From Zancudomyces culisetae HAW-14-8 (taxonomy: Eukaryota > Fungi > Kickxellomycota): a stretch of 64,000 nt of DNA. Location of the stretch: the NCBI GenBank assembly GCA_052426225.1, contig JBNJNM010000013.1:248001-312000 (forward strand), read 5' to 3'. This document shows positions 18,470 through 53,822 of the stretch, one piece after another. Both the position numbers and the translations under genes were made by a program. Position 1 is the first letter of the stretch, and each line of letters opens with the position of its first letter. The notes under the pieces are model-generated. The model saw only the letters and a list, made by a program, of their open reading frames with translations, was not told the DNA's origin and searched no databases.

Positions 18470-18541
18470 AGGTCCTACCGAGAGTCGAACTCGGGCTACT
18501 GGATTCAAAGTCCAATGTCATGACCGTTAGACCATAGGACC
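18470..18541 (-). tRNA. tRNA-Gln(TTG), intronless
   Basis: GGTCCTATGGTCTAACGGTCATGACATTGGACTTTGAATCCAGTAGCCCGAGTTCGACTCTCGGTAGGACCT: 7-bp acceptor stem, CTTTGAA anticodon loop, TTCGA T loop, followed by T4 and T5 runs. Confidence 0.96.
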
Positions 18542-18550
18542 TGTGTCTTT

Positions 18551-18976
18551 TGTCGTATGAATATATAGATGATAATGTATAGTAGGTTAATCTACTGTAA
18601 ATCTCTATTATTCATACTGATTGTCTGATTGTTGCAGATGCTTGCACATCTGTTTTCACCATTGTGGTTTTCCTTTGTGCAGCAACAATCAGACAATGGT
18701 TTACTTTATTACTATTAGGATTTTATAATACTTTATATAACAAACTACTTAAATAGCGACGACAAGGTCTAAGGATACCTTGTACGGGATTTTATACTCT
18801 TTCTTCTAGCGTTTATTATACCAACGATAACTAAATAAAAGATTCATAACTACAGTTAACTAGTTATTTTAGGAAGGTCCTGGACCAATTTTAAACATTA
18901 AGTAATAGTGATTACAGCTTCGTCGTACTGTAATACACTCAATATTTTTATACAATATACAATTTTTCATACGACA
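18551..18976 (+). mobile_element. Solo LTR A (426 bp), TSD CTTT, related to the LTR of element I
   Basis: TGTCGTATGA...TCATACGACA terminal inverted repeat; CTTT on both sides; shares several sequence blocks with 42077-42476. Confidence 0.9.
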
Positions 18977-18982
18977 CTTTTG

Positions 18983-19820
18983 TGTCGCAATAAGCCGAAT
19001 TTCATTATAAACTCGAATAGTGTACGAGAAATTTCGCTGTACACTCATCGCGGGATGTCAATTTTTATAATTTTTATTGTCGTTTAAATTTTTTGTTTAA
19101 ATTAATTTCGACTCAGCATGAAATAAATTCTACATGCTGAGTCCATTCAATAATGATGATTCTAGTACGAAATATGTTTTCATACTGAACATCAAATAAT
19201 TTTAATGATTATGTGTTCCCACACATAATCGTAATTGCACGTATGCTGCAATTATGAAACAAAACTATTAGTATACTTAACAGAATGTTAATAGTGTATA
19301 ATTACTTTATTTTATTGGAAAACTAGTTTAGCATATAAGTTTAATCATATATATATGTGATATAGCAGTTTAGTAGAAAACTCATCCATGTCCTACTATA
19401 CGGATTAATTAATAAACTCGGTTTAAATAAAGATAATTCAAATCAACTTAAAGTAAAATAATCATAATGATTAACTATTTGTTTAACACAGGTGTGAGAG
19501 AGTCTAGGAGAGATTCGTCAACCACCTCCAACAGTACTAGGGGCAGTAGCATGGACCAGGATATCGGGACACTCAGTCCTCGAACCCTTGGGGAACTGAC
19601 GGAAAGCGTCCGACAGATCCAGATCCGTAGAAGCCCGGAAAGCATGTCGGTAGATACACCATCTCCGACGGGATATAGGGATAGTGTCTCATCCGAGAAC
19701 ATCCTAATGAACATTCAGTTACACAAGAGGAGTGTAACCGAGGCCACAGAACAAGCTTCCCCAAGCTTGGCACGTGGTGAGAGCGCGAGTGGGATTACCG
19801 AAAGATCCCACTCTGCGACA
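18983..19820. mobile_element. Solo LTR B (838 bp), TSD TTTG
   Basis: TGTCGCA...TGCGACA termini; TTTG at 18979-18982 and 19821-19824, the latter overlapping the TG of element C. Confidence 0.85.
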
Positions 19821-19822
19821 TT

Positions 19823-22800
19823 TGTTATATTTTTTATGTACTATCTGATCAGTACGTTTGAGTAGCCTGCTGTTTAATTCAGCTACTTCTGGTTCCGGTT
19901 GTGTAGCTAGTATCTCAACCGTGTATGCTTGTTTATGTTTTAATTATTATATTTATACTTAGATACTTATACTATTAATCTTGATTTGTTTATTTACGAT
20001 AGTGTTATTAGGTAATAAGAAAAACTAATAGTTATTGATTATGTAAAAAAAGTTAGATTCAAAAAACTAATTATATATGTTGTTTTTTCTCTGCACCTTT
20101 GTGCCATTTTTTGATATTAAATACTAAATAATTAAGAATAAAAATAAACTATTGATAGGTGTTCGATTGGATAAAAAAAACCTTTCGGAAAAAAATCCAA
20201 CACGAACATTTCGCTATATGACAGATACTCCCCCGTTTAAGGCCAGATGCCCTCATCGTTGATAACCTGTTTGAACCGCTGGAGACTTGATCTTAATGGT
20301 GTACTGACGTCTGGAATCATACCTTCTTTAAGATTGTATCGTTTTAATCGATCTCCATGAACTAGATCTCTGTTTCCTTCGTTGTCGCTTATTATATATG
20401 CTCCCTTGTCGAGTCGTCTTTCGATCTTATATGGGCCTTCCCATATGCGTTCCAGTTTCGGTCTATCAAATTCGACTTTTTTCAATACTAATTCACCTAT
20501 ATTAAAATTAATTTCTGTTACTTTTTTATTATATGTTACTTCATCATTGATTTTTGCATTTTTAATATTTTCTATAGCTAATTTTCTTAGCTCGGGAATA
20601 TTGTCATTAATAGCTTTTATCCGGTTTTGAATCTCTTCTTCGATGTTATCGACTTCTCCATTATACGTCCAAGTCGTGGGTGTATGGATCTGCGCTCCGT
20701 ATAATAGTTCAGATGGGCTATATTTTGTCGATTTATTGCGCATACTTCTTAAGACGAGCAGGGTTTTCCATAAGTATAAATCCCAATTTTTTTTGTCGTT
20801 TTTGCACTGTTTAATTAAAATATTAGTTAGAGTTTGGTTGAGTCTTTCAACCTGGCCGTTGCTCTGCGGCCTATACGCGGTCGTCGGAGTGTGTTTAATT
20901 CCAAGCCATTCGAATACATTCGTACTATTTTCCGATAAAAAACTCGTTCCTCTGTCCGAAATCAACTGTTGTGGGACACCGTATGCTGCTACTATATTAT
21001 TAATAATAAAATTAATTATGGTTTCACTAAGTAAGTTTGCAACTGGTGCTGCAATAGGGTATTTTGTGAAGTAATCTATAGCGGTTAAAATATATCTGTT
21101 TCCGCTTTCAGTAGTTGGTGCTATTGGTCCTATAGCGTCGATTCCAACTATGTCGAAGGGTTTTGTTGCCACTATCGGTACCAATCGATGTCTATTTTCT
21201 TTCGACCCTTTATAATATTGGCATACACTACAGTATGTCACTATCTTTTTTACATCGTTGTATAAGCCTGCTCCACAGTAATTACTCGAAACTCTGATCC
21301 ATGTATTCTCTACACCTTCGTGTGTTTCGTTATGTATTCTGGTTACCACTTCGTCAACATTTTGTTCATTTAGCACTGTCTTCAACTTTCCATTTACTTT
21401 TTTAATTAATATTCCATTTTGAATTATATAGTGTCTCGCTTTGTTTCTGAGTTTTTTTCTGAAATGTTCATCTGCATTTCTAGGATAACTCATATCTGTC
21501 AAGTATTGCCTTACTGCTTCGTGTTCCAAAAAGTCCATTGCCATAACATCGAGTACTGGTTCCTTGCTAATTTTGATCTCGCTTTGCTCTTCTACTAGCC
21601 GACTTAAACAGTCAGCAGGGTTTAATTTACCTGGTAAATGCTGAATTATGTAGTCGTAATTTCGGAGCAACATTGCCCATCTCGCTATCCTACCTGTTAT
21701 ATCTGGACTGTTAAATATTTGTATTAGTGATTTATGATCTGTTCTAATAATAAATTGCTTTCCCCAAACAAAATGTTTAAATTTTTTCACCGCCCAAATT
21801 ACTGCAAGCCCTTCTAGGTGGCTAATTGAATAATTTTTTTCGGCCTTGCTGATACTGCGACTTGCATATTCGATTGCTTTTTCTCCATCCTCGAATTCTT
21901 GTGATAGCACTGCGCCTATACCTAAAATTGAAGCGTCAGTTGTTATAATAAATGTTTTTTCCCAATTGGGGTAACTTAAAATTGGTGCTTGCGTCATTTC
22001 AAATTTTAATTTTTCAAGTGCATTAATTTGTTCTACACTCCACTCCCATTTCTTATCTTTTTTTAATAGTTTTGTTAGTGGTTGTGTTATCTTTGAATAA
22101 TTTTTGATAAATCTGCGATAATATCCTGTTAATCCCAAAATTGACTGAATTTCTTTAATATTATTGGGTGTTTTAATTTTTTGAATTAACAAAATTTTTT
22201 CATTACAAGTTCCAATTCCAAATTTCGAAATTTTATGACCTAAATTTGTTATTTCCTCCTTTCCAAAACTGCATTTATCTTCGTGAATTTGGATTTTGTT
22301 TAGCCTAAGTAAGTCAAATATTTCTTTTAAATTATTAATATGTTCTTCTTTACTACGTGAAAATATAATGATATCGTCAATAAATACGACAGCTTTTTTC
22401 CATAAAACGGGTGCGAGAGCTTTTTCCATGAGTCTTTGGAATGTTGCCGGACTATTTGTTAGTCCGAACGGCATTACATTGAACTCATAACATCCACTAC
22501 CTGGAATTGAGAAAGCAGTTTTTTCTTTATCGTCTGGTGCCATTTTGATCTGCCAGAAACCTGACATGGCATCGAGGCAACTGTAAATGGTTGATCCAGC
22601 TAGCGTGATGAACAAATCTTCGATTAGAGGTAGGGGGTAAACATCCTTTTTTGTGACTTTGTTTAATTGTCTGTAGTCGATACAAACTCTGATTTTTCCA
22701 TTTTTCTTAAAAACTACTACAACTGGGGCGCACCAGTTGGAGTTTGATGGCGATATGATTCCTTGCTTTTCCATATTTGCTAGTTCTTCTCTTACTATTG

Positions 22801-25237
22801 TCTGCAGGTTATAGGGGATTCTATACGGTTTTATTTTTATTGGTTTTGATTCGGTAATGACTATTGAATGTTCGACTACATCAGTTTGAGTTAATTCCTC
22901 CAAACTAGTTGCAAATAAGTCTTTATACTCTTTCTTCAGTTCAGTTATTTCTTTGATTTCTTCGACTGATTTTAGTTGGTTTCCTCTTTCTTCTTTAATT
23001 AACAAAAATATTTCGGAACTGTTGTAGTTCTCATTTGCTGTACTTGCCTCTGTGTATATTGGTATTATTAATTCAGCTCCATTAACGGGTGACGTCATTG
23101 TTGCTGTTTTTAGATTGATAGTACATTGGTGATGTAACAACCAATCTGTCCCCAATATCAACATGTCTTCATTCTTATCTAATATAACCAGATTTGCGCT
23201 AAATATATATTCTGCGATAATAATAGGTACGTCAGTTACTTTTCCGGGAGATATGTGTTTTCTGCCATCCGCCGTCATAATAATCTGTTCGTACTTTGTA
23301 TCCGGTTGCAACCCAAGTCTCCTTAGCATGCCTGGATTAATCACCGAGCATGCAGCGCCAGTGTCGATAACTGCAGTAAGTTTGATTCCGAATATTTTAA
23401 CTTGTACCTTGCAGTTACTAGTACGTGATTTTCGGTAAGTTAACTCATTCAACTCCTTTATTTCAGTCTTTCTGCACAACTTACTCATTTCCGAAGTAAG
23501 AGCAGGTGAAACATCTAACAATTGAGCCAAATTTATTTTAGGATAAACGTGTTCTAGTTCTTCTTTCAAGGTAAACTTAGGTGTATTTTCTGCAGCTCTC
23601 ACAACATATGCCTTCTTCTGTGTAGGATCTTTTGAATGTCTCTCTGTGTTAACCGGCTCTACATCTACTACCATTTTAGAGCTTTCATCTTTCATTCTTT
23701 GTGCAACTATGGATTGTACGCTAGAATCTTTATGTTTAGTTGGCACCTTGACTTCCTGTTTGGTACTTCTGTTTGCATAAGGTGAGTAATTCTTATTATC
23801 TTTTCCTCGTCTTTCGACTGCAAATACCTCTTCTGATTTCGGATCATCCATTTCGACTATATCAATAAAATTTACGTTATTATTATGTGATGTTCCTGTA
23901 AATGTGTTAGTCTGATTAGGGACATTCCTGCATTGGTAGCTTTTATGACCCTCTTGATTGCATTTAAAACACTTAATGTGTGTACTTTGTGCCCCTCCAT
24001 TTCTGTAAGTCCTAGCTTCTCTGAACCTTTTATCAACGGCTTGATCTACCTTTGAGAGTAGGTTGACGCTAAGTTGTTCAAACTTCTTTAGTAAGTCATC
24101 GTATCCTGATTGCTCTCTCTGTTGCACCACCTTTTCCCTTGATCTAATACTTGTTTGTCTTCCAACTGCCCTTTTAGTTTCTGGTGATGGTGCAATGACT
24201 TTTTCAATTTTATCTGAGTTTGTAATGATTTGTATTGCCTTTTTCCAAGTGGTGCACTCGCTCTCCAAAATCTTCCGTTTATGTCCGCCCTCCAGTGCGT
24301 TTATTAAGCAATTCAATTTAACCAACTCTTCTCTTATTCCTGATAACTCCACTAACTGTTCAAAGTCAGATTCAAAGTCATCCAATTCATTATAGTCTGA
24401 TAGCTTAATTTCTTGCAACCTGTTCCACCACATAAGACTCATTTCCTTGTTTTTAAACTTTTCGCAAAAAGATTTCTCTAGTGCTGACCAATCCTTGAAT
24501 GTCGCAACATTCTTTTTAAACCATGCCAATTCCTTTTTTCCAAGATATAGCTGTATTAGCTCTATAGCTTCCTCATCAGACCACTTATTAACTTTTGATA
24601 TAAGTCGGTACCTATCGATCCATTCCTTGGGATCTTCTTTACTACGAGCTTCAAATATACTTGGTTTTTCCAACATCTTTATTCTTTGCAACACTAGAGT
24701 ATTTCTCACAGATGAATCTTAATGATAATGAGACACGTTACGCAATCCCGCTACGAGATATCACGATCGAAACTTCAAATCTGTGCACTTCCTCAGCTAC
24801 TTAAATACTTCAGCTACTTCCCGGCAGAGCCCCCACTGTTATATTTTTTATGTACTATCTGATCAGTACGTTTGAGTAGCCTGCTGTTTAATTCAGCTAC
24901 TTCTGGTTCCGGTTGTGTAGCTAGTATCTCAACCGTGTATGCTTGTTTATGTTTTAATTATTATATTTATACTTAGATACTTATACTATTAATCTTGATT
25001 TGTTTATTTACGATAGTGTTATTAGGTAATAAGAAAAACTAATAGTTATTGATTATGTAAAAAAAGTTAGATTCAAAAAACTAATTATATATGTTGTTTT
25101 TTCTCTGCACCTTTGTGCCATTTTTTGATATTAAATACTAAATAATTAAGAATAAAAATAAACTATTGATAGGTGTTCGATTGGATAAAAAAAACCTTTC
25201 GGAAAAAAATCCAACACGAACATTTCGCTATATGACA
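19823..25237 (-). mobile_element. Ty3/Gypsy element C, full length; 401-bp LTRs 19823-20223 and 24837-25237; TSD CTTT
   Basis: LTRs identical by eye; PBS TGGGGGCTCTGCCGGGA (24819-24835, tRNA-Pro-like); PPT AAACGGGGGAG next to the 3' LTR. Confidence 0.97.
20237..24709 (-). CDS. Gag-Pol polyprotein of element C (single ORF; likely ATG at 24676)
   Basis: CCHC knuckle CFKCNQEGHKSYQC, protease DTGA, RT FIDD, RNase H TDAS, integrase HHCC/DDE, WEGPY motif; no chromodomain. Confidence 0.95.
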   Translation of the reverse strand: MRNTLVLQRIKMLEKPSIFEARSKEDPKEWIDRYRLISKVNKWSDEEAIELIQLYLGKKELAWFKKNVATFKDWSALEKSFCEKFKNKEMSLMWWNRLQEIKLSDYNELDDFESDFEQLVELSGIREELVKLNCLINALEGGHKRKILESECTTWKKAIQIITNSDKIEKVIAPSPETKRAVGRQTSIRSREKVVQQREQSGYDDLLKKFEQLSVNLLSKVDQAVDKRFREARTYRNGGAQSTHIKCFKCNQEGHKSYQCRNVPNQTNTFTGTSHNNNVNFIDIVEMDDPKSEEVFAVERRGKDNKNYSPYANRSTKQEVKVPTKHKDSSVQSIVAQRMKDESSKMVVDVEPVNTERHSKDPTQKKAYVVRAAENTPKFTLKEELEHVYPKINLAQLLDVSPALTSEMSKLCRKTEIKELNELTYRKSRTSNCKVQVKIFGIKLTAVIDTGAACSVINPGMLRRLGLQPDTKYEQIIMTADGRKHISPGKVTDVPIIIAEYIFSANLVILDKNEDMLILGTDWLLHHQCTINLKTATMTSPVNGAELIIPIYTEASTANENYNSSEIFLLIKEERGNQLKSVEEIKEITELKKEYKDLFATSLEELTQTDVVEHSIVITESKPIKIKPYRIPYNLQTIVREELANMEKQGIISPSNSNWCAPVVVVFKKNGKIRVCIDYRQLNKVTKKDVYPLPLIEDLFITLAGSTIYSCLDAMSGFWQIKMAPDDKEKTAFSIPGSGCYEFNVMPFGLTNSPATFQRLMEKALAPVLWKKAVVFIDDIIIFSRSKEEHINNLKEIFDLLRLNKIQIHEDKCSFGKEEITNLGHKISKFGIGTCNEKILLIQKIKTPNNIKEIQSILGLTGYYRRFIKNYSKITQPLTKLLKKDKKWEWSVEQINALEKLKFEMTQAPILSYPNWEKTFIITTDASILGIGAVLSQEFEDGEKAIEYASRSISKAEKNYSISHLEGLAVIWAVKKFKHFVWGKQFIIRTDHKSLIQIFNSPDITGRIARWAMLLRNYDYIIQHLPGKLNPADCLSRLVEEQSEIKISKEPVLDVMAMDFLEHEAVRQYLTDMSYPRNADEHFRKKLRNKARHYIIQNGILIKKVNGKLKTVLNEQNVDEVVTRIHNETHEGVENTWIRVSSNYCGAGLYNDVKKIVTYCSVCQYYKGSKENRHRLVPIVATKPFDIVGIDAIGPIAPTTESGNRYILTAIDYFTKYPIAAPVANLLSETIINFIINNIVAAYGVPQQLISDRGTSFLSENSTNVFEWLGIKHTPTTAYRPQSNGQVERLNQTLTNILIKQCKNDKKNWDLYLWKTLLVLRSMRNKSTKYSPSELLYGAQIHTPTTWTYNGEVDNIEEEIQNRIKAINDNIPELRKLAIENIKNAKINDEVTYNKKVTEINFNIGELVLKKVEFDRPKLERIWEGPYKIERRLDKGAYIISDNEGNRDLVHGDRLKRYNLKEGMIPDVSTPLRSSLQRFKQVINDEGIWP

Positions 25238-25240
25238 CTT

Positions 25241-25837
25241 TCTTGTATGCAAAAGCATCAACTTAAATTTACCGCTTTCATTGCAGCAAAATAGCAGAGA
25301 AATCAATTTTGAAAAAATTGTTTCCTGCGCAACTCAATTTAGAGTACAAAAATTATGACCATGTCATAAATTTTTGTCAATTTTACAGCCAATTTAATAG
25401 TACAAATCGATTTATTTTTTAATCGAATCGATTTTATACTTTATTAGTGGATTTATTTTTAATCAATTTTATTAGTAAATTATTAGTATAAATTGAAAAA
25501 ATTTGTAAATCCGACCAAAACCACACTAAAAGTAAAAATAAACATATATAGAGAGGCGTAATACTATTTTTTTAGTGTAAGGAAAGGGCCATTTTGGCTA
25601 TATTTTCCAGGTTTTGGGAGGAATTCTTTTAAATAAAATTATTTTTACCAAAAATTGTGGAAATTGTCCAGTTGTGTTCTTTCCGAGGGGGTTTTATAGA
25701 TAGTGGTTAACTGGCTAGAAATGGTAAATCCTGTGTCAGTAATAACCACCCTTCTAGGGAACCGTGATTGATATTAGTGGAAGTTTTTTGGGAAAATCCT
25801 ATTGGACTAGTACTAAAAAATGAAAACGAATTCAACA
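25241..25837. mobile_element. Solo LTR D (~597 bp), TSD TCTT
   Basis: Fills the gap between C and E. Ends TCTTGTAT...ATTCAACA (imperfect inverted repeat, left end TC instead of TG); right flank TCTT fits the TSD chain. Confidence 0.7.
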
Positions 25838-25840
25838 TCT

Positions 25841-41662: not shown

Positions 41663-41666
41663 CTTG

Positions 41667-42072
41667 TGTAATATTATTATAAATATGTTTGCCTTTTTAG
41701 GGGCTTTGTACTCAACTCCGAACTCTATCGCACTTGTATAGTTTTTATCCTACACCCTTGCTAATAGTTCGTTTTATGAAGTTAGTACAGTCGTAATTTT
41801 TGTATATCTTATTTTTGTTTTATTTTTATTTTCTTCTTCAAAACTGTGTATAAATTATATATATCTTTTGTTATCTCTAAAACTAATTATAAAACTTTTC
41901 CTGATAACGACTAACCTGTTATCAAGGATAGAAATTGGATATAACCCTCCATAGGGAGAAAAGTCCAATCTCCAATGAAATAAATATGATAAAATAAATA
42001 TGATAAACTAAATATGATAAATAAACTGCCAATCAAAGCTAGAAGGTATGAACTATCATTAATTATATGACA
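41667..42072. mobile_element. Solo LTR H (406 bp), TSD CTTG
   Basis: TGTAATAT...ATATGACA termini; CTTG on both sides. Confidence 0.9.
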
Positions 42073-43208: not shown

Positions 43209-43475
43209 GAGCTTATAGTCGAGTGGCTAAGGCGTCGAACTTGTATTCTGCAGGACCCTGGTTCGATCCTTCGCTGTAAGACCGTAATTGGGAAGTAATT
43301 AGCTGTAGAGTGGATGTGATGTTTCACGGGGCCAATGTGCGCGATAACGTCCTTCGGGACTAGTACCGGACCGTTTCACCTCTCCGATAACTCCTTCGGG
43401 ATCTCGAGCAGTTAATTCGAATCACGTGATCGTGTGGCCCAAGACGTTAGCGCCCTCCTAAGTTCATTTTTTTTT
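43209..43475 (+). ncRNA. Putative Pol III transcript with tRNA-like head and structured body, antisense in the 3' UTR of K
   Basis: TATATAAAAA at 43178, A box TAGTCGAGTGG 43216-43226, B box GGTTCGATCC 43260-43269, two C(TTCG)G hairpins, first T>=4 run is T9 at 43467. Confidence 0.65.
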
Positions 43476-43589
43476 ATTTTTTCTTTTATAATTTTTTATG
43501 CTTTTTAGTTGTTTTTAGGTTGTTTTTATAGTTGTTTTGATAAGTATTTAGGTATAATATTGGTTAATTAATATAATATAATGTTGCTC

Positions 43590-46500
43590 TTATGGTTTGT
43601 TGTGATATGTCTTATAGTATTTTTTCAATAGTTGAGGCGCGTTTATGTTTTCAATCGGCTCCCAGCTTCTTTCACTTATGTCAAAGCCTTTCCAATCAAC
43701 CAAGTAATATTTTTTACCCCTAACAAGCTTAGAATCCAAAATAGCCTTAACTTCATATTCTTTATTTCCATTTATAATTACAGGTGGAGGAAGACTGTTT
43801 AATAATCTGCGGTTACTGCTGGGTTCGATATACGGTTCCAATAACGAGACATGAAAAGTGTTATGGATTTTCATTGTTGGCGGGAGGTCTAAACGGACAG
43901 AAACAGGATTGATAATTTTAGAGATGGTGAAAGGGCCTAGAAGTCTGTGGTCAAGCTTTTTAGAAGGCCTTTGAGTTTTGATATTTTGGCTGGATAGCCA
44001 AACCTTGTCACCTAGTTTATACTTTGGATGTTCAGATCGGTTTACATCAGCATACTTTTTATATTCCTGAGATTTCTTGTTAAGTATGGAAGTGAGGGCT
44101 GATTGAAGTTCTTTGAGTTGTTTTATCCTATCAGAAGCGCTGGGGACGTGAACGTTTTTAGTGATTTGAGGATCAAATCTTGGATGGTAACCATATAGAG
44201 CAAAGAAAGGAGAAGTATTAGTGCTGGAGTGGAGAGTGTTGTTATAAGCAAATTCGGCAATTGGGAGCAGTTCAAACCAATTATCTTGCTGATAGTTGAT
44301 GAAACAGCGTAGATACTGTTCCAATGTTTGATTCACCCGCTCCGTTTGACCGTCTGTCTCTGGATGGAAGGCTGTAGACATTCTAGTATCAACTTTGAGC
44401 AGTTTGAATAGTGAACTCCAAAATTTGGACGAGAATTGGGTTCCACGGTCTGAGATTATGACGTCTGGAAGTCCATGAAGCTTGAATACGTGGGTAAAGA
44501 AGGCGGAGGCAGTTTCTTCTGAGGATGGCAGCTTCTTAAGCGGGATGAAATGGCTCATTTTAGTGAACCTGTCTACAACTACCATAATAGTAGTGTGCTT
44601 GTTGGATGGAGGAAGATCAGTTATGAAATCCATGGTGATAGATTTCCATGGGCCTGAGGGAGCGGGTAGCGGAAGTAGTTTACCGTAAACTTTGTGTCTT
44701 CTGTCCTTTGATCTATTGCATGTATCACAGGTTTGAACAAACTCTTTAATAAATTTGCGCATTCCTGGAAACCAAAAGTCTCGTTCCACGAGCTCCAATG
44801 TCTTCTTAGCACCAAAATGGCCGGCTGGGCCACTGTCATGTCTAGAACTTACAACTTGCGGCTTCATTTTGTCGGGGACGACAACACGGTTTCCAAGCAT
44901 TACAATCCCATCTTCAACTTCTACTGGCTCGTTAGACTTATGGCTGCTCTGGTATCTTGCGGCATCCAATAATCCTTCTAGATGGGCTTTGCTGGATTTG
45001 GCGATTTCTTGAGCAAAATCACTGTCCACTATGCTGATAGTGTCTATGAAGTGGTCTTCACCTATGATGTTGTTGTTGGCGACCTTATCAGGTGTGTGAT
45101 TGGGCAAACGAGAAAGAGCGTCAGGTTTGCCTCCTTGAGATCCAGGCCTGTAGGTTATGATGAAGCTGAATCTACTGAGATCAAGAGACCACCTTGCGTG
45201 TCTTCTGTTGAGTGACTTCAGATTTTTAAAGGTCTCCAGATTCTTATGATCTGTAAGAATCTTGAACGGGATGGAGGAGCCTTCCAGATGATGTCGCCAT
45301 TCTTTGAGAGCCTTGATGATTGCCAAAAGTTCCTTGTCATAGATATTATAGTTGGATTCGGCAGTGTTGAGTTTGTAAGAGTAGTAGGCACAAGGACGGA
45401 GATCACCGTTTTCATCTTCTTGGGACAGAGCAGCCCCAATGGCGTAGTCTGAGGCGTCAGTTTCCAGAATAAACTGTTTTCCTGGGTCAGGGTATCTGAG
45501 AACGGGGGAAGTGGTGAGATCCTGGATAAGAGTATTAAAGGCTTCACCTGCCTCCTTACTCCAAACGAACGGTGTATCCTTTTTCAGAAGTCTTGTGATT
45601 GGCAGGGCTTTCAGTGAGAAGTATGGGATAAACTTTCGGTAGTAATTGGCAAAACCGAGAAACTTCTGGACCTCCTTGACATTGGTGGGTGGTAGCCATT
45701 CCTTTACACACTTGACTTTAGCAGGATCGGTGGCTATTCCATCTGAAGACACAACATGGCCTAGAAATTCAACTTCCCTGATATGGAAGTGACATTTTTC
45801 GGCGTTACAGTACAGACCATTTTCAAGCAGCTTTTTCAGAACAGATTTCACATGATTGATGTGAGTGTCAGTGTCATTGGAAAATATAAAGATGTCGTCA
45901 AGGTATGCAATTGCATAGAGATCCAATACATCTCGTAACACATCATTGATAAAGTGCTGAAAGGTAGCGGGAGCATTTGTCAAGCCAAATGGCATGACCT
46001 GGTACTCAAAGTGGCCATATCTGCACCTAAATGCAGTTTTCCACTCGTCACCTTCCTTGATCCGCACTAAGTTGTAGGCACCTTTGAGATCCAATTTTGT
46101 AAAGACCTTGGCTGTACGCAGCCGATCGAACGCCTCATCAATCCTAGGTAATGGGTACCTATTCTTGATGGTAGCTTCGTTCAATCGGCGGTAGTCAACA
46201 CAAAGGCGCAAGTCTCCAGACTTCTTCTTTACAAACATGATTGGTGCACCAGCAGGGGAGACAGAGCGTCTGATGAAGCCATTGGTGAGGTTTTCGCGGA
46301 TGTAACCTCTTAGAGACTCTAACTCTACTTCAGATAGCGGGTATATTGGCCCCCAGTATGGGGTGTAACCCTCTTTGGTGTTGACAGGACAGTCATAACG
46401 GCGGTGAGGAGGAAGTGAGACGGCAGACTTGGGATTGAACACTTCCTTGAATTCAGAGTATATTACTGGAAGTTGCGGGAATTCTTCCAAGTACTCTAGC

Positions 46501-47414
46501 GGGGACTCAGAAACGGCAAAATTTACAGGATCTGGATCCAAGGAATATTCTGGCTCGGGGGTGGTGACTGGGGTTTTTTTATGAAATGGCCGGGATCTGA
46601 CGACTGGTTCTCTTGGCTCAATTTTCTTCAGGATTGCTTTGGGAAGTTCAGGTCTGAGTGGTACTTTTGGAACAGGGGTTACTGGACGACGGGGCTCAGG
46701 AATTTGCTTAACATGGTTATTTACTCGATTCTCAATAGCGGTGGGTTTGGGCAAACTTTGGGTTTCAGGTTCTGGAGTGACTGATTGGACTGGTGCAGGA
46801 ACAGGAACAGGAAGAATCTCTTCAATTCTGGCGTATGGATTTGACGGAGCTGGGCTGGGGAGATCAGGAGACGGAGGCGGTGAAAATCTTTGATTTTCAG
46901 TGTTTGAATCGTCCAACTTGACCGATTCGAGCAACTTGGCACTGTGTGGAAGCAGGGTAGTTGATAATCTATTCAACACCCTTTGGAGGATAGTTGGGTT
47001 TGTGGACGTATTCTGACTAATATTTTGTTCTACTGGATCTGGATCTGGTTCATCAGGTGACTTGAACACGGCCTGGATGGAGTGGGTATCAACACAATTT
47101 GTACTGCAAAAGTCAGAGTCGAAGTGGATCTGGAGGTCTGGCCAAGTTATACTAGGATTGTGTTTGCGTAACCAGGGTAATCCAAAAATAATGTCAGCGT
47201 GATTGGTTGGAATCGGGATAAGGTCTAGGTGTTCAGAGTGGTTAGGACCGGACTTGATATGGGCATTATCAACCTTGACATTTATGCCCCCTGGGTATAT
47301 CTGGTGACCATCAACACTTTCTAGGACGATGGTTTTTTCTGCTTCTTTGGTTGGGAGGTTTAGTTTTTCTAATAAATCTTGACGAATAAAGTTGGCTGAA
47401 GCACCGGAGTCCAC
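43590..47414 (-). CDS. Pol of chromovirus K (PR-RT-RH-IN-chromodomain); frame is open upstream to 47525
   Basis: ALVDSGAS, YLDD, ETDASD, integrase, LLGPF, chromodomain EYEVKAILDSK..YYLVDWKGF..RSWEP. Confidence 0.95.
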   Translation of the reverse strand: MDSGASANFIRQDLLEKLNLPTKEAEKTIVLESVDGHQIYPGGINVKVDNAHIKSGPNHSEHLDLIPIPTNHADIIFGLPWLRKHNPSITWPDLQIHFDSDFCSTNCVDTHSIQAVFKSPDEPDPDPVEQNISQNTSTNPTILQRVLNRLSTTLLPHSAKLLESVKLDDSNTENQRFSPPPSPDLPSPAPSNPYARIEEILPVPVPAPVQSVTPEPETQSLPKPTAIENRVNNHVKQIPEPRRPVTPVPKVPLRPELPKAILKKIEPREPVVRSRPFHKKTPVTTPEPEYSLDPDPVNFAVSESPLEYLEEFPQLPVIYSEFKEVFNPKSAVSLPPHRRYDCPVNTKEGYTPYWGPIYPLSEVELESLRGYIRENLTNGFIRRSVSPAGAPIMFVKKKSGDLRLCVDYRRLNEATIKNRYPLPRIDEAFDRLRTAKVFTKLDLKGAYNLVRIKEGDEWKTAFRCRYGHFEYQVMPFGLTNAPATFQHFINDVLRDVLDLYAIAYLDDIFIFSNDTDTHINHVKSVLKKLLENGLYCNAEKCHFHIREVEFLGHVVSSDGIATDPAKVKCVKEWLPPTNVKEVQKFLGFANYYRKFIPYFSLKALPITRLLKKDTPFVWSKEAGEAFNTLIQDLTTSPVLRYPDPGKQFILETDASDYAIGAALSQEDENGDLRPCAYYSYKLNTAESNYNIYDKELLAIIKALKEWRHHLEGSSIPFKILTDHKNLETFKNLKSLNRRHARWSLDLSRFSFIITYRPGSQGGKPDALSRLPNHTPDKVANNNIIGEDHFIDTISIVDSDFAQEIAKSSKAHLEGLLDAARYQSSHKSNEPVEVEDGIVMLGNRVVVPDKMKPQVVSSRHDSGPAGHFGAKKTLELVERDFWFPGMRKFIKEFVQTCDTCNRSKDRRHKVYGKLLPLPAPSGPWKSITMDFITDLPPSNKHTTIMVVVDRFTKMSHFIPLKKLPSSEETASAFFTHVFKLHGLPDVIISDRGTQFSSKFWSSLFKLLKVDTRMSTAFHPETDGQTERVNQTLEQYLRCFINYQQDNWFELLPIAEFAYNNTLHSSTNTSPFFALYGYHPRFDPQITKNVHVPSASDRIKQLKELQSALTSILNKKSQEYKKYADVNRSEHPKYKLGDKVWLSSQNIKTQRPSKKLDHRLLGPFTISKIINPVSVRLDLPPTMKIHNTFHVSLLEPYIEPSSNRRLLNSLPPPVIINGNKEYEVKAILDSKLVRGKKYYLVDWKGFDISERSWEPIENINAPQLLKKYYKTYHNKP

Positions 47415-47515
47415 TAATGCAACAAGTTCGTGTAGATTATTTAAAACAACTTTAATATGAAATTTATTACTAGAAATATTAGAATTATTTGCTACGCTCA
47501 GGAGTAACTCCCGGA

Positions 47516-48484
47516 CTACATCTGATCACTGTCTTTTGGCACCCCAGGTATAGGGGGTCTTGGCCTGCGGAGCGGACAGTTACGGAGAATGTGGTTCGGC
47601 TGACCACAGTATAGACAAAGATTATTGGCTAATCTTCTCTGACGTTCGGCTGTATCTAGCGGTGCTCTTGGACGGGAGGTGACGGCATCAACGTCCATTG
47701 GTTCAGGAGCCTGGTGATCTGGGACAGGCATGGCTGGACGGGGGAAGACCGGTGGAGCCGGAGTACTCCAGTTGCGGAATGGGACGCTTCTCTTGGGCAG
47801 GTAGGCACTGCGGGCATTGATTCTGTTCTCAAGCTCAATCACCTGATCAATGAGCTGGTCCAAGGTGTTTGGTAGCGGTTCAGTGGCAAGGCGCTGGACA
47901 AGGCTAGTATCCAATCCGATGTAAAACAGGTGGATTTTGGCTGGCTCGTTGAATCCACTGAGAGAGGCGAGGTTTCTGAACTCGGTTGCAAATTCCAGGA
48001 CGGAACGCTGGGACTGGCGACAACTATGAAGCTGGGTGATAGCTCGGGCTTGGTGGCCAGGATCTGAGAATCTCTTTTGAAATTCATTCTCAAACCCTTT
48101 GAAATCTGAGAGCAACGGTGATTGGGTATCGATAAGGTTATCGAACCACAGGGCAGCATGACCGGCAAGGTGAGAACTGATGAACCATATCTTGTTATGG
48201 TCACTCTGGAACACGTCTGGTCTGGCCCAGAACTGGCGCTTGATCTCGGCGGTGAAGGCTCGGAACCTTCCTGATTCTCCTGAGTATTTCTGGATTTCTG
48301 GTATTCTGATACCATCAATCCTTGGCTGCGGATTTGGTGCAGGCAAATTCTGCAACTGACTGGGGACTTGGGCGGGTGTCTGGGCTTGAGCCTGGGCTTG
48401 AGCTTGACTTTCTTGCAAAGCTTGTTGCATAGCTAATTTTGCGATCTCATCTAATTGGTGGACCATCATTAACTTTTCAACCAA
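47516..48484 (-). CDS. Gag of chromovirus K
   Basis: L.GHAALWF, Q..RSVLEFATEF, EPMDVD and CLYCGQPNHILRNC are typical chromovirus Gag motifs. Confidence 0.93.
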   Translation of the reverse strand: MVEKLMMVHQLDEIAKLAMQQALQESQAQAQAQAQTPAQVPSQLQNLPAPNPQPRIDGIRIPEIQKYSGESGRFRAFTAEIKRQFWARPDVFQSDHNKIWFISSHLAGHAALWFDNLIDTQSPLLSDFKGFENEFQKRFSDPGHQARAITQLHSCRQSQRSVLEFATEFRNLASLSGFNEPAKIHLFYIGLDTSLVQRLATEPLPNTLDQLIDQVIELENRINARSAYLPKRSVPFRNWSTPAPPVFPRPAMPVPDHQAPEPMDVDAVTSRPRAPLDTAERQRRLANNLCLYCGQPNHILRNCPLRRPRPPIPGVPKDSDQM

Positions 48485-51400
48485 TAATTAGAAGTTTCCC
48501 AAAATGTCAGGAAACTAATTTATTTAAGTTGGGAAACTTAATGTTCCCAAGTTAGGATTCAAAGTTAGTTAAATATGATTAAAAATAAATAATAAAACTT
48601 ATGGGTAAATAATGCGATTCTGACAATACCTGTGGAATGCCATCACACCAGAAAAGAGAAAAATGTTGATTAAAGGAGGGGTTGAAACTTATGAAAGTGC
48701 TATCGACATACTTTGTGAAGTAGAGGATGTCGATAAATTAAGTGGAGTAATAAACGAAGTGCCAAAATTGTCATGTAAGGGAGAAGTGCAGATAAATAAA
48801 GACGATATAAATTCTAAGTCAGAAATGGAAGTATTAATTGGAAAGTTTGATGATCTTAGTATTAATGTAATGGAGTACATAAGATCTACGGTTAATAATA
48901 ATCAATTTACTAGAAACAGAAATGATCACAGCTATAGCAACTATGCTCAACGTAACGAAAACAACAGATATGACTCCAGAGCTAATGTCAAGAAGGGATA
49001 TATAAAACCAAACACTTCACCTTATGAAAACAAGGTCGACGTTAATACGAGAAGTAATACGGTTCAACAGTCTCAGCCTGATATAAGCCAGCATACCGAC
49101 CATAAGGCAGTAAACTGTTTGGAAGTGGAACGGTGCGTAGATATTAATAGCTATGACAGTGACCAGCTGGTATTTGGCAATACTACTAATGACTATCAAG
49201 CAGCTGATTACTTTACAGAAGAACTTAATGAAGTATATATGGCCGAGAAAAGAAAGAACATGGGGGCAGGTTTCAAACAAGCTGGAGAACAGTCCGCTGT
49301 TAAGAAAATACATTTGAATAATAACCTCGGACAAGAAGTAAGCCCGGAAAAGCAACCAGAAAATGATACTGTTATACCAGACGTATATATGCAATCACAG
49401 GAAACCAGAGAAACTACAGATAAATCTAACAATAGTATCAAGAAAACTAGAAGCGTAGTTAATAACCCAGAAATCAAAAGATACTCATTATTCGAAGACC
49501 TATCAAGAGTAAAAGCTAACATTAGTATACCACAACTAATCGACATTGCTCCAACAGTACAATCTCAACTAATCAAACTATATAAAGACACAACAACTAT
49601 AAGACCAGTTAATTCATTATACAACGACAAACTTACTAATTGCAGAACGTTTGTAGAAATTTTAGGAAAAAAGTGTCTTACCATTATAGATACTGGAGCA
49701 GCGTGTAGTGTGATTTCAAAGATGTTAGTAGATAAACTAGGAATTCAAGCTGATCAAAGATCGGTTGAGTCAATTGTCACTGCAGATGGCAAGAAACATA
49801 TATCCTTGGGCAAAATATCAGAACTGCCAATAACAATTTCTCAACAAATTTTTAGTACGGAGTTAATAATCATGAACATACCTACCGAACTTATGATATT
49901 GGGTATTGACTGGATGAGAAAATATAAAGCAAATGTCAATGTAGAGAACCAAAAACTGTCCATCACGAATCAGTTTACAACTGTACAGATTTCATTCTCT
50001 ACTAACGAGATAAATAAAGCACAAATACAGACTTACTCTAAAGATAATGACGTGGAAATATTTGGGATAGGAAAAGAGGTTGATGAAAAGGCACATAGTA
50101 CAACATTGGAGCCTACCATAAAGGTACTAATTGAGGAATATAAAGATATATTTGCAGATGAATACACGCAACTTACTTCAACAAACGTGATCGAACATGG
50201 GATAGACACTGGAGAAGCTAGTCCAATTAAAATAAGACCGTACCGAATACCTAATGTTATGAAAGACTTAGTAAGAAAAGAATTAAAAATAATGAAAGAA
50301 AAAGGAATAATCGAACCCTGCTTTTCGGATTGGTGTGCACCGGTCGTAACCGTATGAAAAAAAAACGGATCTCTTAGAATTTGTTCGGATTACAGAAAAT
50401 TAAATTCAGTAACCAAAAAAGACAATTACCCACTTCCAAATATAAATGACATTTTCGAAGCACTTACGGGATCAGCTGTATTCAGCACCCTTGATGCGTT
50501 ATCAGGGTTCTGGCAAGTCAAGCTGAAGGAAACTGATAAACACAAAACGGCGTTCACAATACCTGGAGAAGGGTTATACTGCTACAATGTGATGCCCTTT
50601 GGGCTATGTAACAGCCCACCTACTTTCCAAAGACTTATGGAAAGAGTACTACATTCAGTATTGTGGAAGTCCGCCGTGGTATTTGTTGATGACATCGTGG
50701 TATTCTCTAAAAATATGGTACAACATGTTAAGGATTTAAAAGAAGTGTTTAGTTTACTCAAGAAGCATAAAATTAAATTAAACACGGGAAAGTGAACTTT
50801 GGTCAGACCCGTTTGAATTATTTAGGACACATTATTTCGTCTAGAGGGATAGAGACTGACCCTAAAAAAGTAATAGCAATTGAAAAGATTCCTACTCCCA
50901 AAAGTATTAAAGAATTTCAAAGCTTCCTTGGCACTACTAATTACTATAGGAAATTTATTCAAGGTTACGCACAAATAGCAGGTCCATTAAATAGTTTATT
51001 AAAGAAAGATAACATATGGATATGGAATGATGACTGCGAAGCAGCAATGAAAACGCTAAAAGAAAAGTTAACTACGGCACCCGTGTTAACACACCCAATT
51101 TGGGACATACCATTTGTTGTAACCACCGACGCGTCACAGCAAGGTATTGGTGGAATCCTCAGTCAAATCCAGAATGGTCGAGAACACCCTATTGCATTTG
51201 TGAGTAGATCATTGAAAAAGGCTGAAAAAAACTATTCAATAACTCACCTTGAAGGGTTAGCAATAATCTACTCGGTTAACCAATTTCGTAACTATATTTG
51301 GGGAAGAAGGTTCAAAATCGTAACGGATCACTCAGCTTTGGTTAGGCTATTTGATTCTAAGGAAGCTTCAGGCAGGTTGGCCAGATGGGCTATCATCTTA

Positions 51401-53318
51401 AGGGAGTACGATTATACGCTAGAACATAGAAAAGGCAAGCATAACCCGGCTGACCTCATATCAAGATGCATTCCTGTTAACCCAAATGATAATAGTACTA
51501 TATCCGAACTAACTAATAACGGTTGTACACAATTCGGTCAAGATAAATCGCAAGCTTATATGGAAGGAAATGATGATGACGAAAATACGAAAGCTATATT
51601 TTATATGGATATTCTACAGTATAATGCAATAAAAAATTATTTAGCTAATAAAACATATCCAAGAAATAGTGACGAACTCTTCAGAAATGATTAAGGAAAA
51701 ATGCAATCAAATACGAATTAGATAATGACAAATTATTCAAACATTCAAAAAAATTTGGCATTCGTGAAGTATTACACGAATTGAACTGCAAAGAAAAAAT
51801 AATCGAATTGCACAACGAAAATCACTTAGGAGTTCATAATACCTGGAATATTGTAAAAGAAAAGTATTATTCGCCAAAATTGTTTGAAATCACTAAACAC
51901 GTAGTTAATTTCTGTGATGTTTGTCAGCGTTACAAATCATCTAATAAGAGGAAAAATTTATTCAATCCTATAATTGCCTTGCAACCTTTCGATGTTATTG
52001 GATTGGATATAATTGGACCAATAAATCCCACATCAGCAGAAGGAAATCGTTATATTATCTCTGCTATCGACTACCTAACAAAATGGCCGATTTGTAAAGC
52101 AGTACCTAGTGTCCAATCTGACACAATTATCAACTTTTTAGTTTATGATGTCATTTCAAACTTTGGTATCCCTAGGAAATTGATTACGGATAGAGGCTCA
52201 AATTTTCTAAGCGAAGCAATAGTAAACTTTTACAAATTCATGGGAATTAACCATAGCCCTACAACTGCCTATAGACCCCAATCTAATGGACAAGTGGAGC
52301 GTCAAAATCAATACATAAAAAACGTGTTATCGAAAATATGCAAGGATGATAAAACTAATTGGGATAAATTATTATGGAAAGCATTGTTGGTTATGAGAAC
52401 TACTAAAAACAGAATCACAAAAAAATCTCCATCTGAATTATTATATGGTATAGAAATTTCCACGCCTGATTCATGGGCACATGATGACACAAATAAAACA
52501 TCGAAGAAGCTATTGTTGAAAGAATAAAATTTGTGAATTCAAAATTTAAAGAGCTCAGAGATATAGCAATTGATAAAATAACAACTAACAAAAAATATGT
52601 AAAAGATAGGTACGATAGAAATATTAGGCAAGTAGAATTCAAAGTAGGACAGTATGTGTTAAAACATAACGACATTCCTGATTCGAAATTTGCGGAAAAA
52701 TGGTTAGGGCCATATATAATTATTAACAGACTAGGTCAAGGAGTATACAACATTCGCGACGCTAATAACAATTTTGACATCGTCAATGGGGATAGACTCA
52801 AAGAGTATAACACTATTGGAATTCCTCAAATTATGTCTAGTAGAATCAGATCTACAATCTCGCAACAACATCGAAGATCGAGTACGATGGGGACCATCGA
52901 ACCTTAAAGGGGGGGTTGTTGTGTAAAAATTTGGTTTACTGGTTCGGCACGTATAGCGACACGTTGCCGAACAATTAATGATTGTCGCTGAATCTGATTG
53001 TTGAAGGTGCTCGTACAAGCATTTTCTCCATTGCGGTTTTTGCTTGTATACAACAATTAGATTCGTATTTACTATTATTATTATATTTACTTTAACATGG
53101 ATTATATTTAGTTTTAAACTCTTATATACAGCGTTAGAGGACACAAGGTACCTCGTCGGATTTTTCTCTTCACATAGCGAATTAGTTCTTTATTTATAAA
53201 TTAAATAAATAGTAATATATCATAAAGTGAACGGTCCTGAACCAAAACATTAGTATATCAGCGTCGTTGCACTGATATATATAAATAAATAATAAAACTT
53301 GAAAATTTATGCAACACT

Positions 53319-53806
53319 TGTTGTATAATTAAATTTTACTTATAATTATTTATTTTTTTCTTATTTATATAGGTATAATATGTATCGTATAATTATTGTT
53401 ATATATTATAAACTTAGTTGAAACTATTATAAACTTAATATAAACATCTGTAGTTGATCATAACTATTTATTTACTACTATAAAGCTTGTATGATAGAAT
53501 GATATTTATTTCCTTATGCAATAACTAACCCTTTAAATACTTTTTCTAGTATTATAAACATACTAATAACTAACTATTGAACTAATACTAACTAACTATT
53601 GAACTAATACTAACTAACTAAATAAACTAATACTGAAATAATTTAAATGAGTAATAACTAATACTCTTAGAAAAAACATCAATGAATCAGTTTCATTGAA
53701 TACTAAAAAAACTAAAACTAAAAGTATATTATTAATTTAATTATTTCACTCGATGATAAACATATAATATTAGTTTATCACCAAGGGTTCATGTCACTAT
53801 ATGACA
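53319..53806. mobile_element. Solo LTR J (~488 bp), most distal stack member
   Basis: Starts TGTTGTATAATT (same terminus recurs at 63835), ends CTATATGACA followed by CTTA like other stack members; contains ~3 copies of a 22-bp repeat TAACTATTGAACTAATACTAAC. Left and right TSDs do not match exactly. Confidence 0.7.
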
Positions 53807-53822
53807 CTTATGTAATGGTTTT

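What the first reader, a model, noticed from the sequence alone, without database searches (positions are those of the whole stretch)
18470..53810. tRNA-anchored, chronologically ordered stack of ten different LTR retrotransposon insertions
Seen: between the tRNA-Gln 5' end and 53810 there is no host DNA. Elements A,B,C,D,E,F,G,H,I,J are separated by only 2-6 bp, and these spacers resolve into overlapping 4-bp TSDs of the tRNA flank TGTGTCTT(N): GTCT (-4..-7; E), TCTT (-5..-8; D,F), CTTN (-6..-9; A,C,G,H,I,J) and TTTG (-8..-11; B). Several TSDs include the first bases of the next distal LTR (B copies the TG of C, C the first T of D, D the first T of E, I the TG of J), which fixes the order for those pairs as proximal = younger. 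Established: S. cerevisiae Ty3 integrates at Pol III start sites via TFIIIB with 5-bp TSDs, and Dictyostelium DGLT-A inserts upstream of tRNA genes. Inference: a radiation of 4-bp-TSD Ty3/Gypsy families measures position from the Pol III complex. Because the internal promoter survives each insertion, the site regenerates and grows like a leader-polarised tape recording invasion history.
Basis: partly seen in the sequence, partly recalled or inferred. Interest (0 to 1): 0.92.

Follow-up and report, generated by a model that had tools for sequence, protein, structure and literature searches.

The report
Retrotransposon stack anchored on tRNA gene
In the mosquito-gut fungus Zancudomyces culisetae, at least ten different Ty3/gypsy retrotransposons each landed in the same few bases just upstream of one tRNA gene, pushing older copies outward into a 35-kb ordered pile; this is a new fungal lineage doing what yeast Ty3 and Tj1 are already known to do.

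Summary
From the 5' end of tRNA-Gln(TTG) (18541, minus strand) to 53806 the sequence is ten abutting LTR elements, five full-length and five solo, separated by 2-6 bp. An eleventh element, a chromovirus, is nested inside element I. If the 4-bp target-site duplications are removed in order from the tRNA outward, the tRNA flank returns to TGTGTCTT for nine elements. Exceptions: D carries three extra bases, J's flanks do not match, and the DNA beyond 53810 starts with another retroelement remnant, not host DNA.

The organism is Z. culisetae (Harpellales). Contigs from an independent assembly of another strain show the same pattern. A roughly 13-unit stack ends 8 nt upstream of tRNA-Val with spacer CGAC. 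Other copies end 9 nt upstream of tRNA-Thr and 7 nt upstream of tRNA-Ile. Targeting therefore follows position, not sequence.

The families form one Harpellales clade. Their integrases lack the chromodomain that Ty3 uses to bind Brf1 and instead share a clade-specific C-terminal peptide. In behaviour (same insertion window, mostly the same orientation as the tRNA) they most resemble Tj1, but they are not its kin.

Verdict: real, interpretation supported. It is a new member of a known kind, of moderate interest.

The parts
18470..18541 (-). tRNA-Gln(TTG), the anchor. Its internal promoter is untouched by the insertions.
   Evidence: ARAGORN; Rfam RF00005, 65.9 bits.
18542..18550 (.). The retained tRNA 5' flank, TGTGTCTT(T). 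All insertions fall at -4 to -11 of this flank.
18551..18976 (.). A: solo LTR of 426 bp with an 11-bp terminal inverted repeat. TSD is CTTT (-6 to -9). Youngest element.
18983..19820 (.). B: LTR-like unit of 838 bp with TGTCGCA...TGCGACA termini. TSD is TTTG (-8 to -11) and includes the TG of C.
   Evidence: No second copy was found.
19823..25237 (-). C: full-length element. LTRs are 401 bp and identical. The gag-pol ORF is intact at 1490 aa. TSD is CTTT.
   Evidence: Copies occur in L003 (99.3%) and L001.
25241..25837 (.). D: solo LTR whose TG is at 25244. The TSD TCTT fits only if the three bases TCT before the TG belong to D.
   Evidence: No second copy was found.
25841..30850 (-). E: full-length element. 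LTRs are about 235 bp with 1 mismatch. The ORF is intact at 1484 aa. TSD is GTCT (-4 to -7).
30856..36611 (-). F: full-length element. LTRs are 396 bp with 1 mismatch. The ORF is broken into three pieces. TSD is TCTT.
36617..41662 (-). G: full-length element. LTRs are 317 bp with 1 mismatch. The ORF is intact at 1447 aa. TSD is CTTG.
   Evidence: A 99.4% copy sits at tRNA-Val in L001.
36963..37013 (-). A clade-specific peptide at the extreme C-terminus of G's integrase, after the SH3-like domain. Candidate targeting tether.
   Evidence: AlphaFold2 predicts an unstructured tail.
41667..42072 (-). H: solo LTR of 406 bp. TSD is CTTG. Orientation is inferred from the U3-start motif.
   Evidence: A 98.5% copy ends 9 nt upstream of tRNA-Thr in L001.
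42077..53316 (+). I: full-length element in the opposite orientation. LTRs are 400 bp with 2 mismatches. The ORF is broken and interrupted by K. TSD is CTTG, made of CT plus the TG of J.
43029..48625 (-). K: nested chromovirus with a chromodomain and a Tf2-type SH3. LTRs are 121 bp. The 5-bp TSD is ATACC. It is not tRNA-positioned.
53319..53806 (-). J: solo LTR of 488 bp. Its flanks do not match (GTCT and CTTA). Orientation is inferred.
53811..53976 (+). X: a 5'-truncated remnant, consisting of a polypurine tract plus a short LTR related to K. The stack therefore does not end in host DNA at 53810.

Best explanation
A clade of chromodomain-less Ty3/gypsy retrotransposons in Z. culisetae integrates by position. 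Its intasome is tethered to something assembled on a tRNA gene, most likely TFIIIB or TFIIIC at the Pol III start site. [quoted passage not shown]

The tRNA promoter is internal, so the gene and 7-11 bp of its flank survive each hit, and the target is re-created next to the newest LTR. Each later insertion, of any family in the clade, lands between the tRNA and the previous element. Older copies move outward and the array becomes ordered by age.

Shown: the anatomy, the TSD nesting, the same geometry at four different tRNA genes, and the common descent of the families.

Inferred: that the Pol III factors are the tether, and that the conserved C-terminal integrase peptide is the part that binds them.
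For: Nesting of TSDs.
- Nine of ten elements have exact 4-bp TSDs. Removing them in order restores one constant flank.
- Four TSDs copy the first bases of the distal neighbour's LTR, and three spacers contain overlapped TSDs. This fixes proximal = later for A>B>C>D>E>F>G and for I>J, independently of any targeting model.

Same geometry at other tRNA genes, with unrelated flanks.
- tRNA-Val: about 13 LTR units with CGAC-type spacers, the last four exactly CGAC, ending 8 nt from the gene.
- tRNA-Thr: 9 nt.
- tRNA-Ile: 7 nt.
- These come from a different assembly and strain, whose host DNA is 99.1-99.3% identical to the window.
- In Smittium culicis a related element with identical LTRs lies upstream of a tRNA cluster.

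Orientation. C, E, F and G, the L001 G copy, the L005 element and the L007 element all point the same way as the tRNA. Only I and remnant X are opposite.

Descent. All the tRNA-associated families form one clade (SH-aLRT 96).

Integrase.
- It ends in one SH3-like barrel plus a tail of 27-30 aa in the Z. culisetae families.
- The tail carries a motif conserved at the amino-acid level through many synonymous changes.
- That motif occurs in 11 of the 147 proteins held, and all 11 are in this clade.

Precedent. Tj1 inserts 5-11 bp upstream of mature tRNA 5' ends in a fixed orientation (PMC4600332). Ty3 is tethered by TFIIIB (PMC8632968).
Against: - No de novo integration, and no protein interaction, has been observed.
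- The comparison loci were reached through retroelement proteins, so they are not an unbiased sample of tRNA genes or of element copies.
- Three tRNA-side elements lack matching TSDs: J in the window, the element in L005 (GAAT versus ATCA), and the H copy in L001 (AAGC versus AACT).
- D needs three extra terminal bases to fit.
- A J-like LTR start at 63835 has no tRNA next to it within the window.
- The LTR mismatch counts (0-2) are too small to prove the age gradient.
- The peptide motif was defined after seeing the sequences.
Confidence: 0.85

Rival explanations
1. Sequence-directed or LTR-end-directed integration. The elements recognise a short motif (TCTT/CTTN) or the termini of resident LTRs, and the tRNA gene is incidental.
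For: All spacers in the window are variants of GTCTT, and every junction lies next to an LTR end.
Against: At tRNA-Val the repeated target is CGAC. At tRNA-Ile it is ATCA, and at tRNA-Thr AACT. The distance to the tRNA is the same in each case, 7-9 nt. If LTR ends were the target, new insertions would fall at any junction and on either side. Instead all eight orderable neighbour pairs are proximal = younger, which has a chance of about 0.004 under random placement.
Confidence: 0.04
2. Assembly artefact. Repeats were wrongly concatenated in a long-read assembly.
For: The region is 35 kb of repeats. No reads were available for inspection.
Against: The ten LTR families are different from one another, so there is nothing to collapse or mis-join. 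Every junction obeys one TSD logic. An independent short-read assembly of another strain shows the same stacked architecture at tRNA-Val and tRNA-Thr.
Confidence: 0.02
3. Random integration followed by selection. Copies survive only in the harmless space upstream of tRNA genes.
For: Compact fungal genomes do purge harmful insertions. The nested chromovirus K shows that TE-rich DNA tolerates insertions.
Against: Selection cannot explain base-pair precision: a 4-11 bp window, exact 4-nt spacers repeated four times, and the complete absence of host DNA between elements. It also cannot explain the orientation bias or the near-identical LTRs of five full-length copies at a single site.
Confidence: 0.04
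4. Same targeting outcome but by direct descent from Ty3. On this view the clade is a Ty3 relative that uses the Ty3 mechanism, with tandem CTD-chromodomain barrels binding TBP and Brf1.
For: Ty3 Gag-Pol is the best solved-structure match. There are weak Integrase_p58_C hits at the same place in C, F and G.
Against: The alignment to Ty3 stops at Ty3 residue 1454-1457, which is where I place the start of the vestigial chromodomain, and only a short tail follows it: 27-30 aa after the SH3-like domain in the Z. culisetae families. The nested chromovirus K scores higher against Ty3 (473 bits) than C or G do (373 and 360 bits). The TSD is 4 bp, not 5.
Confidence: 0.1

Closest known systems
Tj1 of Schizosaccharomyces japonicus (Ty3/gypsy; PMC4600332)
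   Same: [quoted passage not shown] The host carries many related families, and these build retroelement/tRNA clusters.
   Different: Tj1 has a 5-bp TSD and belongs to the Tf1/Tf2 self-priming lineage in an ascomycete. The elements here have a 4-bp TSD and a PBS complementary to tRNA 3' ends (it begins TGG, 1-5 nt after the LTR). They have no chromodomain, the host is a zoopagomycete, and at least one insertion (I) is in the opposite orientation.
Ty3 of Saccharomyces cerevisiae (PMC8632968, PMC5911963)
   Same: Position-specific integration at the Pol III start site. The internal promoter keeps the target usable after each insertion. Ty3 is the best solved-structure homologue of the polyprotein.
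   Different: Ty3 has a 5-bp TSD and inserts 1-4 bp from the TSS, about 16-19 bp from the mature 5' end (that figure is from my own knowledge). It inserts in both orientations and is tethered by its CTD plus a vestigial chromodomain bound to TBP and Brf1. The chromodomain is absent here.
DGLT-A of Dictyostelium and the yeast elements Tca8/beta, Tyl3, Ylt1 and Tyl6 (table in PMC5911963)
   Same: These are Ty3/gypsy elements found a fixed short distance upstream of tRNA genes. They are viewed as convergent safe-haven targeting in compact genomes.
   Different: They differ in distance (DGLT-A 13-33 bp, beta 6-30 bp) and in host lineage. None is reported from Zoopagomycota, and none as a base-pair-resolved stack of ten families.
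Short integrase peptides that tether to host factors: the Ty5 targeting domain with Sir4, the Ty1 IN C-terminus with AC40 (PMC7459421), and the MLV IN tail with BET proteins (the last from my own knowledge)
   Same: A short, probably unstructured integrase segment carries target choice. In Ty1 and MLV it lies at or near the C-terminus.
   Different: Here the role of the peptide is only inferred, from clade-specific conservation. Its partner is unknown.

Membership tests
Ty3/gypsy (Metaviridae) LTR retrotransposons | Pol domain order PR-RT-RNaseH-IN, with gag upstream. | tested here: met
   Pfam hits in that order for C, E, F, G, I and K.
Ty3/gypsy (Metaviridae) LTR retrotransposons | Direct LTRs with TG...CA ends, a PBS after the 5' LTR, a polypurine tract before the 3' LTR, and a short TSD. 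| tested here: met
   The TSD is 4 bp.
Pol III-gene-targeted position-specific retrotransposons (Ty3/Tj1-like behaviour) | Copies lie at a fixed short distance upstream of several different tRNA genes, whatever the flank sequence. | tested here: met
   Gln 9 nt, Val 8 nt, Thr 9 nt, Ile 7 nt. The sample is small and was ascertained through element proteins.
Pol III-gene-targeted position-specific retrotransposons (Ty3/Tj1-like behaviour) | De novo integration depends on a functional Pol III promoter and on TFIIIB/TFIIIC. | not testable with these tools
   This needs a transposition assay and interaction tests.
Ty3 lineage / chromoviruses | A C-terminal integrase chromodomain. In Ty3 it is vestigial and binds Brf1. 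| tested here: not met
   No Chromo hit. The alignment to Ty3 ends at residue 1454. The model shows one barrel plus a disordered tail, and only IN-CTD, SH3 or Tudor-like folds are matched. K, in the same window, does have the chromodomain.
Ty3 lineage / chromoviruses | Closer to Ty3 than other Ty3/gypsy lineages are. | tested here: not met
   Bits against 7q5b: K 473, C 373, G 360. K lies far from the clade in the tree. No tree including Ty3 itself could be built.
Tf1/Tj1 lineage | Self-primed reverse transcription (the PBS pairs with the element's own 5' end) and a 5-bp TSD. | tested here: not met
   The PBS is complementary to tRNA 3' ends and in F extends into the T-arm. The TSD is 4 bp.
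Tf1/Tj1 lineage | Fixed orientation relative to the tRNA gene. | tested here: inconclusive
   Seven of eight full-length copies point the same way as the tRNA. I is opposite. Orientation of the solo LTRs is only partly assignable.

The most novel reading that the evidence does not exclude
Pol III start-site targeting arose independently in a chromodomain-less Ty3/gypsy clade of early-diverging fungi (Harpellales, possibly wider). It is mediated not by a folded domain but by a roughly 17-residue peptide at the extreme C-terminus of integrase. The resulting stacks are base-pair-resolved, datable logs of successive family invasions that differ between strains.
Probability: 0.45. Interest if true: 0.65.

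Novelty: new member of a known kind. Interest (0 to 1): 0.5.

Why it matters
Integration targeted at tRNA genes is the textbook 'safe haven' strategy, but it has been documented only in ascomycete yeasts and in dictyostelids. A separate clade in Zoopagomycota with ten or more diverged families, sharing one target window and one small conserved integrase tail, amounts to a natural mutagenesis panel. It could be used to find what reads the Pol III complex and to ask whether such targeting is convergent.

The stacks also give a relative order of insertions without needing a molecular clock. Because host DNA differs by 0.8% between the two strains while LTR pairs differ by 0-0.5%, the full-length insertions are predicted to be polymorphic between strains.

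Tried and rejected
- Exact-sequence look-ups of G's polyprotein and of a flanking GTPase found nothing. The window's strain is not in the gene-position collection.
- The orthologous contig of the other strain (L006) is colinear with window 44-16285.
- No second copy of B or D was found, even with 7-mer-seeded BLAST.
- Naive outward removal of TSDs, with D starting at its TG, fails from D onward. I rejected that boundary in favour of D starting at 25241.
- The Calcarisporiella locus L008 has inverted LTR fragments, one abutting a tRNA-like gene. It is interrupted by N runs and could not be interpreted.
- The S. culicis locus L007 has an N gap between the element and the tRNA cluster, so no distance could be read.
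- Short ORFs between 54233 and 56863 were searched one at a time and have no Pfam match. They were not joined into a gene model, so I cannot say whether 53977-57900 is host DNA.
- The broken ORFs of F and I were used as single pieces and never joined.
- A phylogeny with named references (Ty3, Tj1, DGLT-A) was not possible, because none was returned by the protein searches and I did not type sequences from memory.


Full report
**Observation**

The window has a single tRNA gene, tRNA-Gln(TTG), at 18470-18541 on the minus strand. Its upstream side therefore runs toward higher coordinates.

Self-BLAST shows five pairs of near-identical direct repeats, each enclosing a long ORF:
- C: 19823-25237, LTR 401 bp, 0 mismatches.
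- E: 25841-30850, about 235 bp, 1 mismatch.
- F: 30856-36611, 396 bp, 1 mismatch.
- G: 36617-41662, 317 bp, 1 mismatch.
- I: 42077-53316, 400 bp, 2 mismatches.

A sixth pair (43029-43149 and 48505-48625) belongs to element K, which is nested in I and flanked by a 5-bp duplication, ATACC.

Pfam gives protease, RT, RNase H and integrase in Ty3/gypsy order for all of them. K alone has a chromodomain and a Tf2-type SH3. C, E and G have uninterrupted ORFs of 1490, 1484 and 1447 aa. F and I are broken.

The remaining intervals are TG...CA-bounded units A (18551-18976), B (18983-19820), D (25241/25244-25837), H (41667-42072) and J (53319-53806). Only 2-6 bp separate neighbours. The ten LTRs are mutually unrelated by BLAST, except for a 93-nt stretch at 74% identity between A and I.

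**Target-site duplications**

Read from the tRNA outward, the sequence is: TGTGTCTTT [A] CTTTTG [B] TT [C] CTTTCT [D] TCT [E] GTCTT [F] TCTTG [G] CTTG [H] CTTG [I] CT [J] CTTA.

Removing A (CTTT), then B (TTTG, whose right copy is TT plus the TG of C), then C (CTTT) each time leaves a perfect 4-bp match.

With D starting at its TG the scheme breaks.
- D: TCTT, using the first T of E.
- E: GTCT.
- F: TCTT.
- G, H and I: CTTG, where I uses the TG of J.

Throughout, the flank next to the tRNA is always TGTGTCTT.

Two things do not fit. D carries three extra bases, which could be an unprocessed cDNA end or a small indel; this cannot be tested without another D copy. J has GTCT on one side and CTTA on the other.

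The overlapped duplications fix the order as A after B after C after D after E after F after G, and I after J, without assuming any targeting model. The LTR mismatch counts going outward (0, 1, 1, 1, 2) agree with this but are too small to count as evidence.

**The distal end**

In fact 53811-53835 contains a polypurine tract of the same form as those before the 3' LTRs of C, E, F, I and K. It is followed at 53836 by an LTR start that aligns to K's short LTR as far as about 53976.

So a 5'-truncated K-like remnant (X) abuts J. Together with J's mismatched flanks, this suggests a deletion or an LTR-LTR exchange at the old end of the stack. Whether 53977-57900 is host DNA is unknown.

**Organism and other copies**

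G's polyprotein matches Zancudomyces culisetae proteins at up to 99% identity. The flanking LIM-domain gene matches at 99%. The orthologous host contig of assembly GCA_001969505.1 is 99.1-99.3% identical to window 44-16285. The window therefore comes from another strain of this Harpellales gut fungus.

Contigs of that assembly, fetched through element proteins, show the same architecture:
- **L001, tRNA-Val.** A run of about 13 LTR-bounded units ends at tRNA-Val(TAC). The last four junctions are a C-type solo LTR, another solo LTR, a 99.4% copy of G, and solo LTR L. They are separated by exactly CGAC, and the last CGAC lies at -5 to -8 of the tRNA.
- **L001, tRNA-Thr.** A 98.5% copy of H ends 9 nt upstream of tRNA-Thr(AGT), behind further LTRs.
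- **L005, tRNA-Ile.** A related full-length element ends 7 nt upstream of tRNA-Ile(AAT).

Flank sequences differ completely between these sites (CTTN, CGAC, AACT, ATCA), yet the distance is constant at 7-9 nt. This excludes targeting of a TCTT-like motif. It also makes an assembly artefact implausible.

There are exceptions. The H copy and the L005 element do not have matching flanks, which may reflect exchange between copies at different tRNA genes.

In Smittium culicis a related element with identical LTRs lies upstream of a tRNA cluster, but an N gap hides the junction.

**Relationships**

I built a maximum-likelihood tree of polyproteins, using single uninterrupted ORF pieces only. It places C, E, F and the L005 element in one group. 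G and the L002 and L004 elements form a second group, and I with its near-identical relative P0043 forms a third. Two S. culicis elements and one unnamed assembly protein (P0034) join these. Together they make one clade (SH-aLRT 96).

An unnamed JGI protein and a Calcarisporiella element are the next branches out. K is far away. Families within the clade share about 55-64% amino-acid identity, so 'radiation' is a fair word.

The best solved-structure match is Ty3 Gag-Pol. However, chromovirus K scores higher against it (473 bits) than C (373) or G (360) do. The clade is therefore not Ty3's close kin.

**Mechanism**

In Ty3, the integrase CTD binds TBP, and a vestigial chromodomain (integrase residues 440-504) staples it to Brf1 and acts as a ruler (PMC8632968).

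Here the alignment to Ty3 stops at Ty3 polyprotein residue 1454. By my placement of the integrase start (from my own knowledge of the Ty3 record), that is the beginning of the chromodomain. Only about 24-30 residues follow.

An AlphaFold2 model of the last 130 residues (mean pLDDT 76) shows a long linker helix, one SH3-like barrel and an unstructured tail. Foldseek matches only retroviral IN CTDs and Tudor/PWWP-type barrels, and those weakly.

The tail carries a motif of the form M-(I/V)-P-(E/D)-V-(T/S)-x-x-L-(K/R)-S-K-L-(K/R)-R-F-(K/R):
- It is conserved across families and into S. culicis.
- It is kept through many synonymous codon changes.
- It is present in 11 of the 147 proteins held, all of them in this clade. 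The pattern was written after seeing the sequences.

I therefore propose that this peptide tethers integrase to a Pol III initiation factor. This is inference only.

The behavioural match to Tj1 is close. [quoted passage not shown] Here seven of eight full-length copies share the tRNA's orientation.

Lineage markers differ from Tj1, however: a 4-bp rather than 5-bp TSD, and tRNA-primed rather than self-primed PBS.

**Novelty**

The review table of Pol III-targeted elements lists only ascomycete yeasts and dictyostelids (PMC5911963). Full-text searches for Zancudomyces, Smittium, Harpellales or Zoopagomycota together with retrotransposon and tRNA terms found nothing relevant.

LTR clusters next to tRNA genes are well known in S. 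cerevisiae, C. albicans and S. japonicus (partly from my own knowledge). The self-regenerating target and the ordered pile are an expected consequence of position-specific integration, not a new principle.

This is a new member of a known kind. It is notable for its host phylum, the number of families, the cleanness of the stack, and the absence of the Ty3-type chromodomain.

**Prediction**

Host DNA differs by about 0.8% between the two strains, while the LTR pairs of all five full-length elements differ by 0-0.5%. If substitution rates are similar, these insertions postdate the strain split and should be polymorphic.

No human sequence was involved.

Noticed in passing
window 17902-18343; L001 15207-15999: A palindromic (foldback) AT-rich repeat, about 75-80% similar between loci, begins about 120-127 bp downstream of both tRNA-Gln (window) and tRNA-Val (L001). 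It may be a second element type associated with the 3' side of tRNA genes.
   Followed up: partly
window 15587-16438 and 61717-62572: A 96% identical direct repeat that carries an ORF with a zf-RVT domain, probably the 3' part of a non-LTR retrotransposon. It brackets the whole stack at 46 kb spacing. The other strain's contig ends inside it.
   Followed up: partly
window 63835-64000: A J-like LTR start, with the first 49 nt 98% identical to J. No tRNA gene lies on its left side, and the copy is cut by the window end. It is a possible counter-example to strict tRNA adjacency.
   Followed up: no
window 57916-61362: A 1149-aa ORF with no Pfam domain. It is built largely of 21-, 27- and 12-nt tandem repeats that encode a Thr/Ser/Glu-rich, mucin- or adhesin-like protein.
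   Followed up: no
L001 1220-1370; L007 6446-6673 and 10766-10993: tRNA genes in these Harpellales stand in head-to-tail clusters only 2-5 nt apart (Thr-Thr; Val-Glu-Met, and the L007 cluster is also duplicated in inverted orientation). This suggests polycistronic tRNA transcription, in which only the first gene would offer a Pol III start site.
   Followed up: no
L008 9516-9843 and 14831-15497 (Calcarisporiella thermophila): The nearest non-Harpellales relative is flanked by inverted LTR fragments. One of them directly abuts the 5' end of a tRNA-like gene (15276-15351), so tRNA association may extend beyond Harpellales. The locus contains N runs.
   Followed up: partly
window 8768-8781: A polypurine-tract-like motif followed by TGT, in AT-rich DNA between host genes. 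It may be another old LTR remnant. Nearby, at window 7114-7218, the two strains differ by an indel.
   Followed up: no
window 42539-43042 and 48627-50354: The chromodomain-bearing element K inserted into the gag region of element I, not at the tRNA. Two integrase targeting styles are thus visible side by side in one locus.
   Followed up: yes
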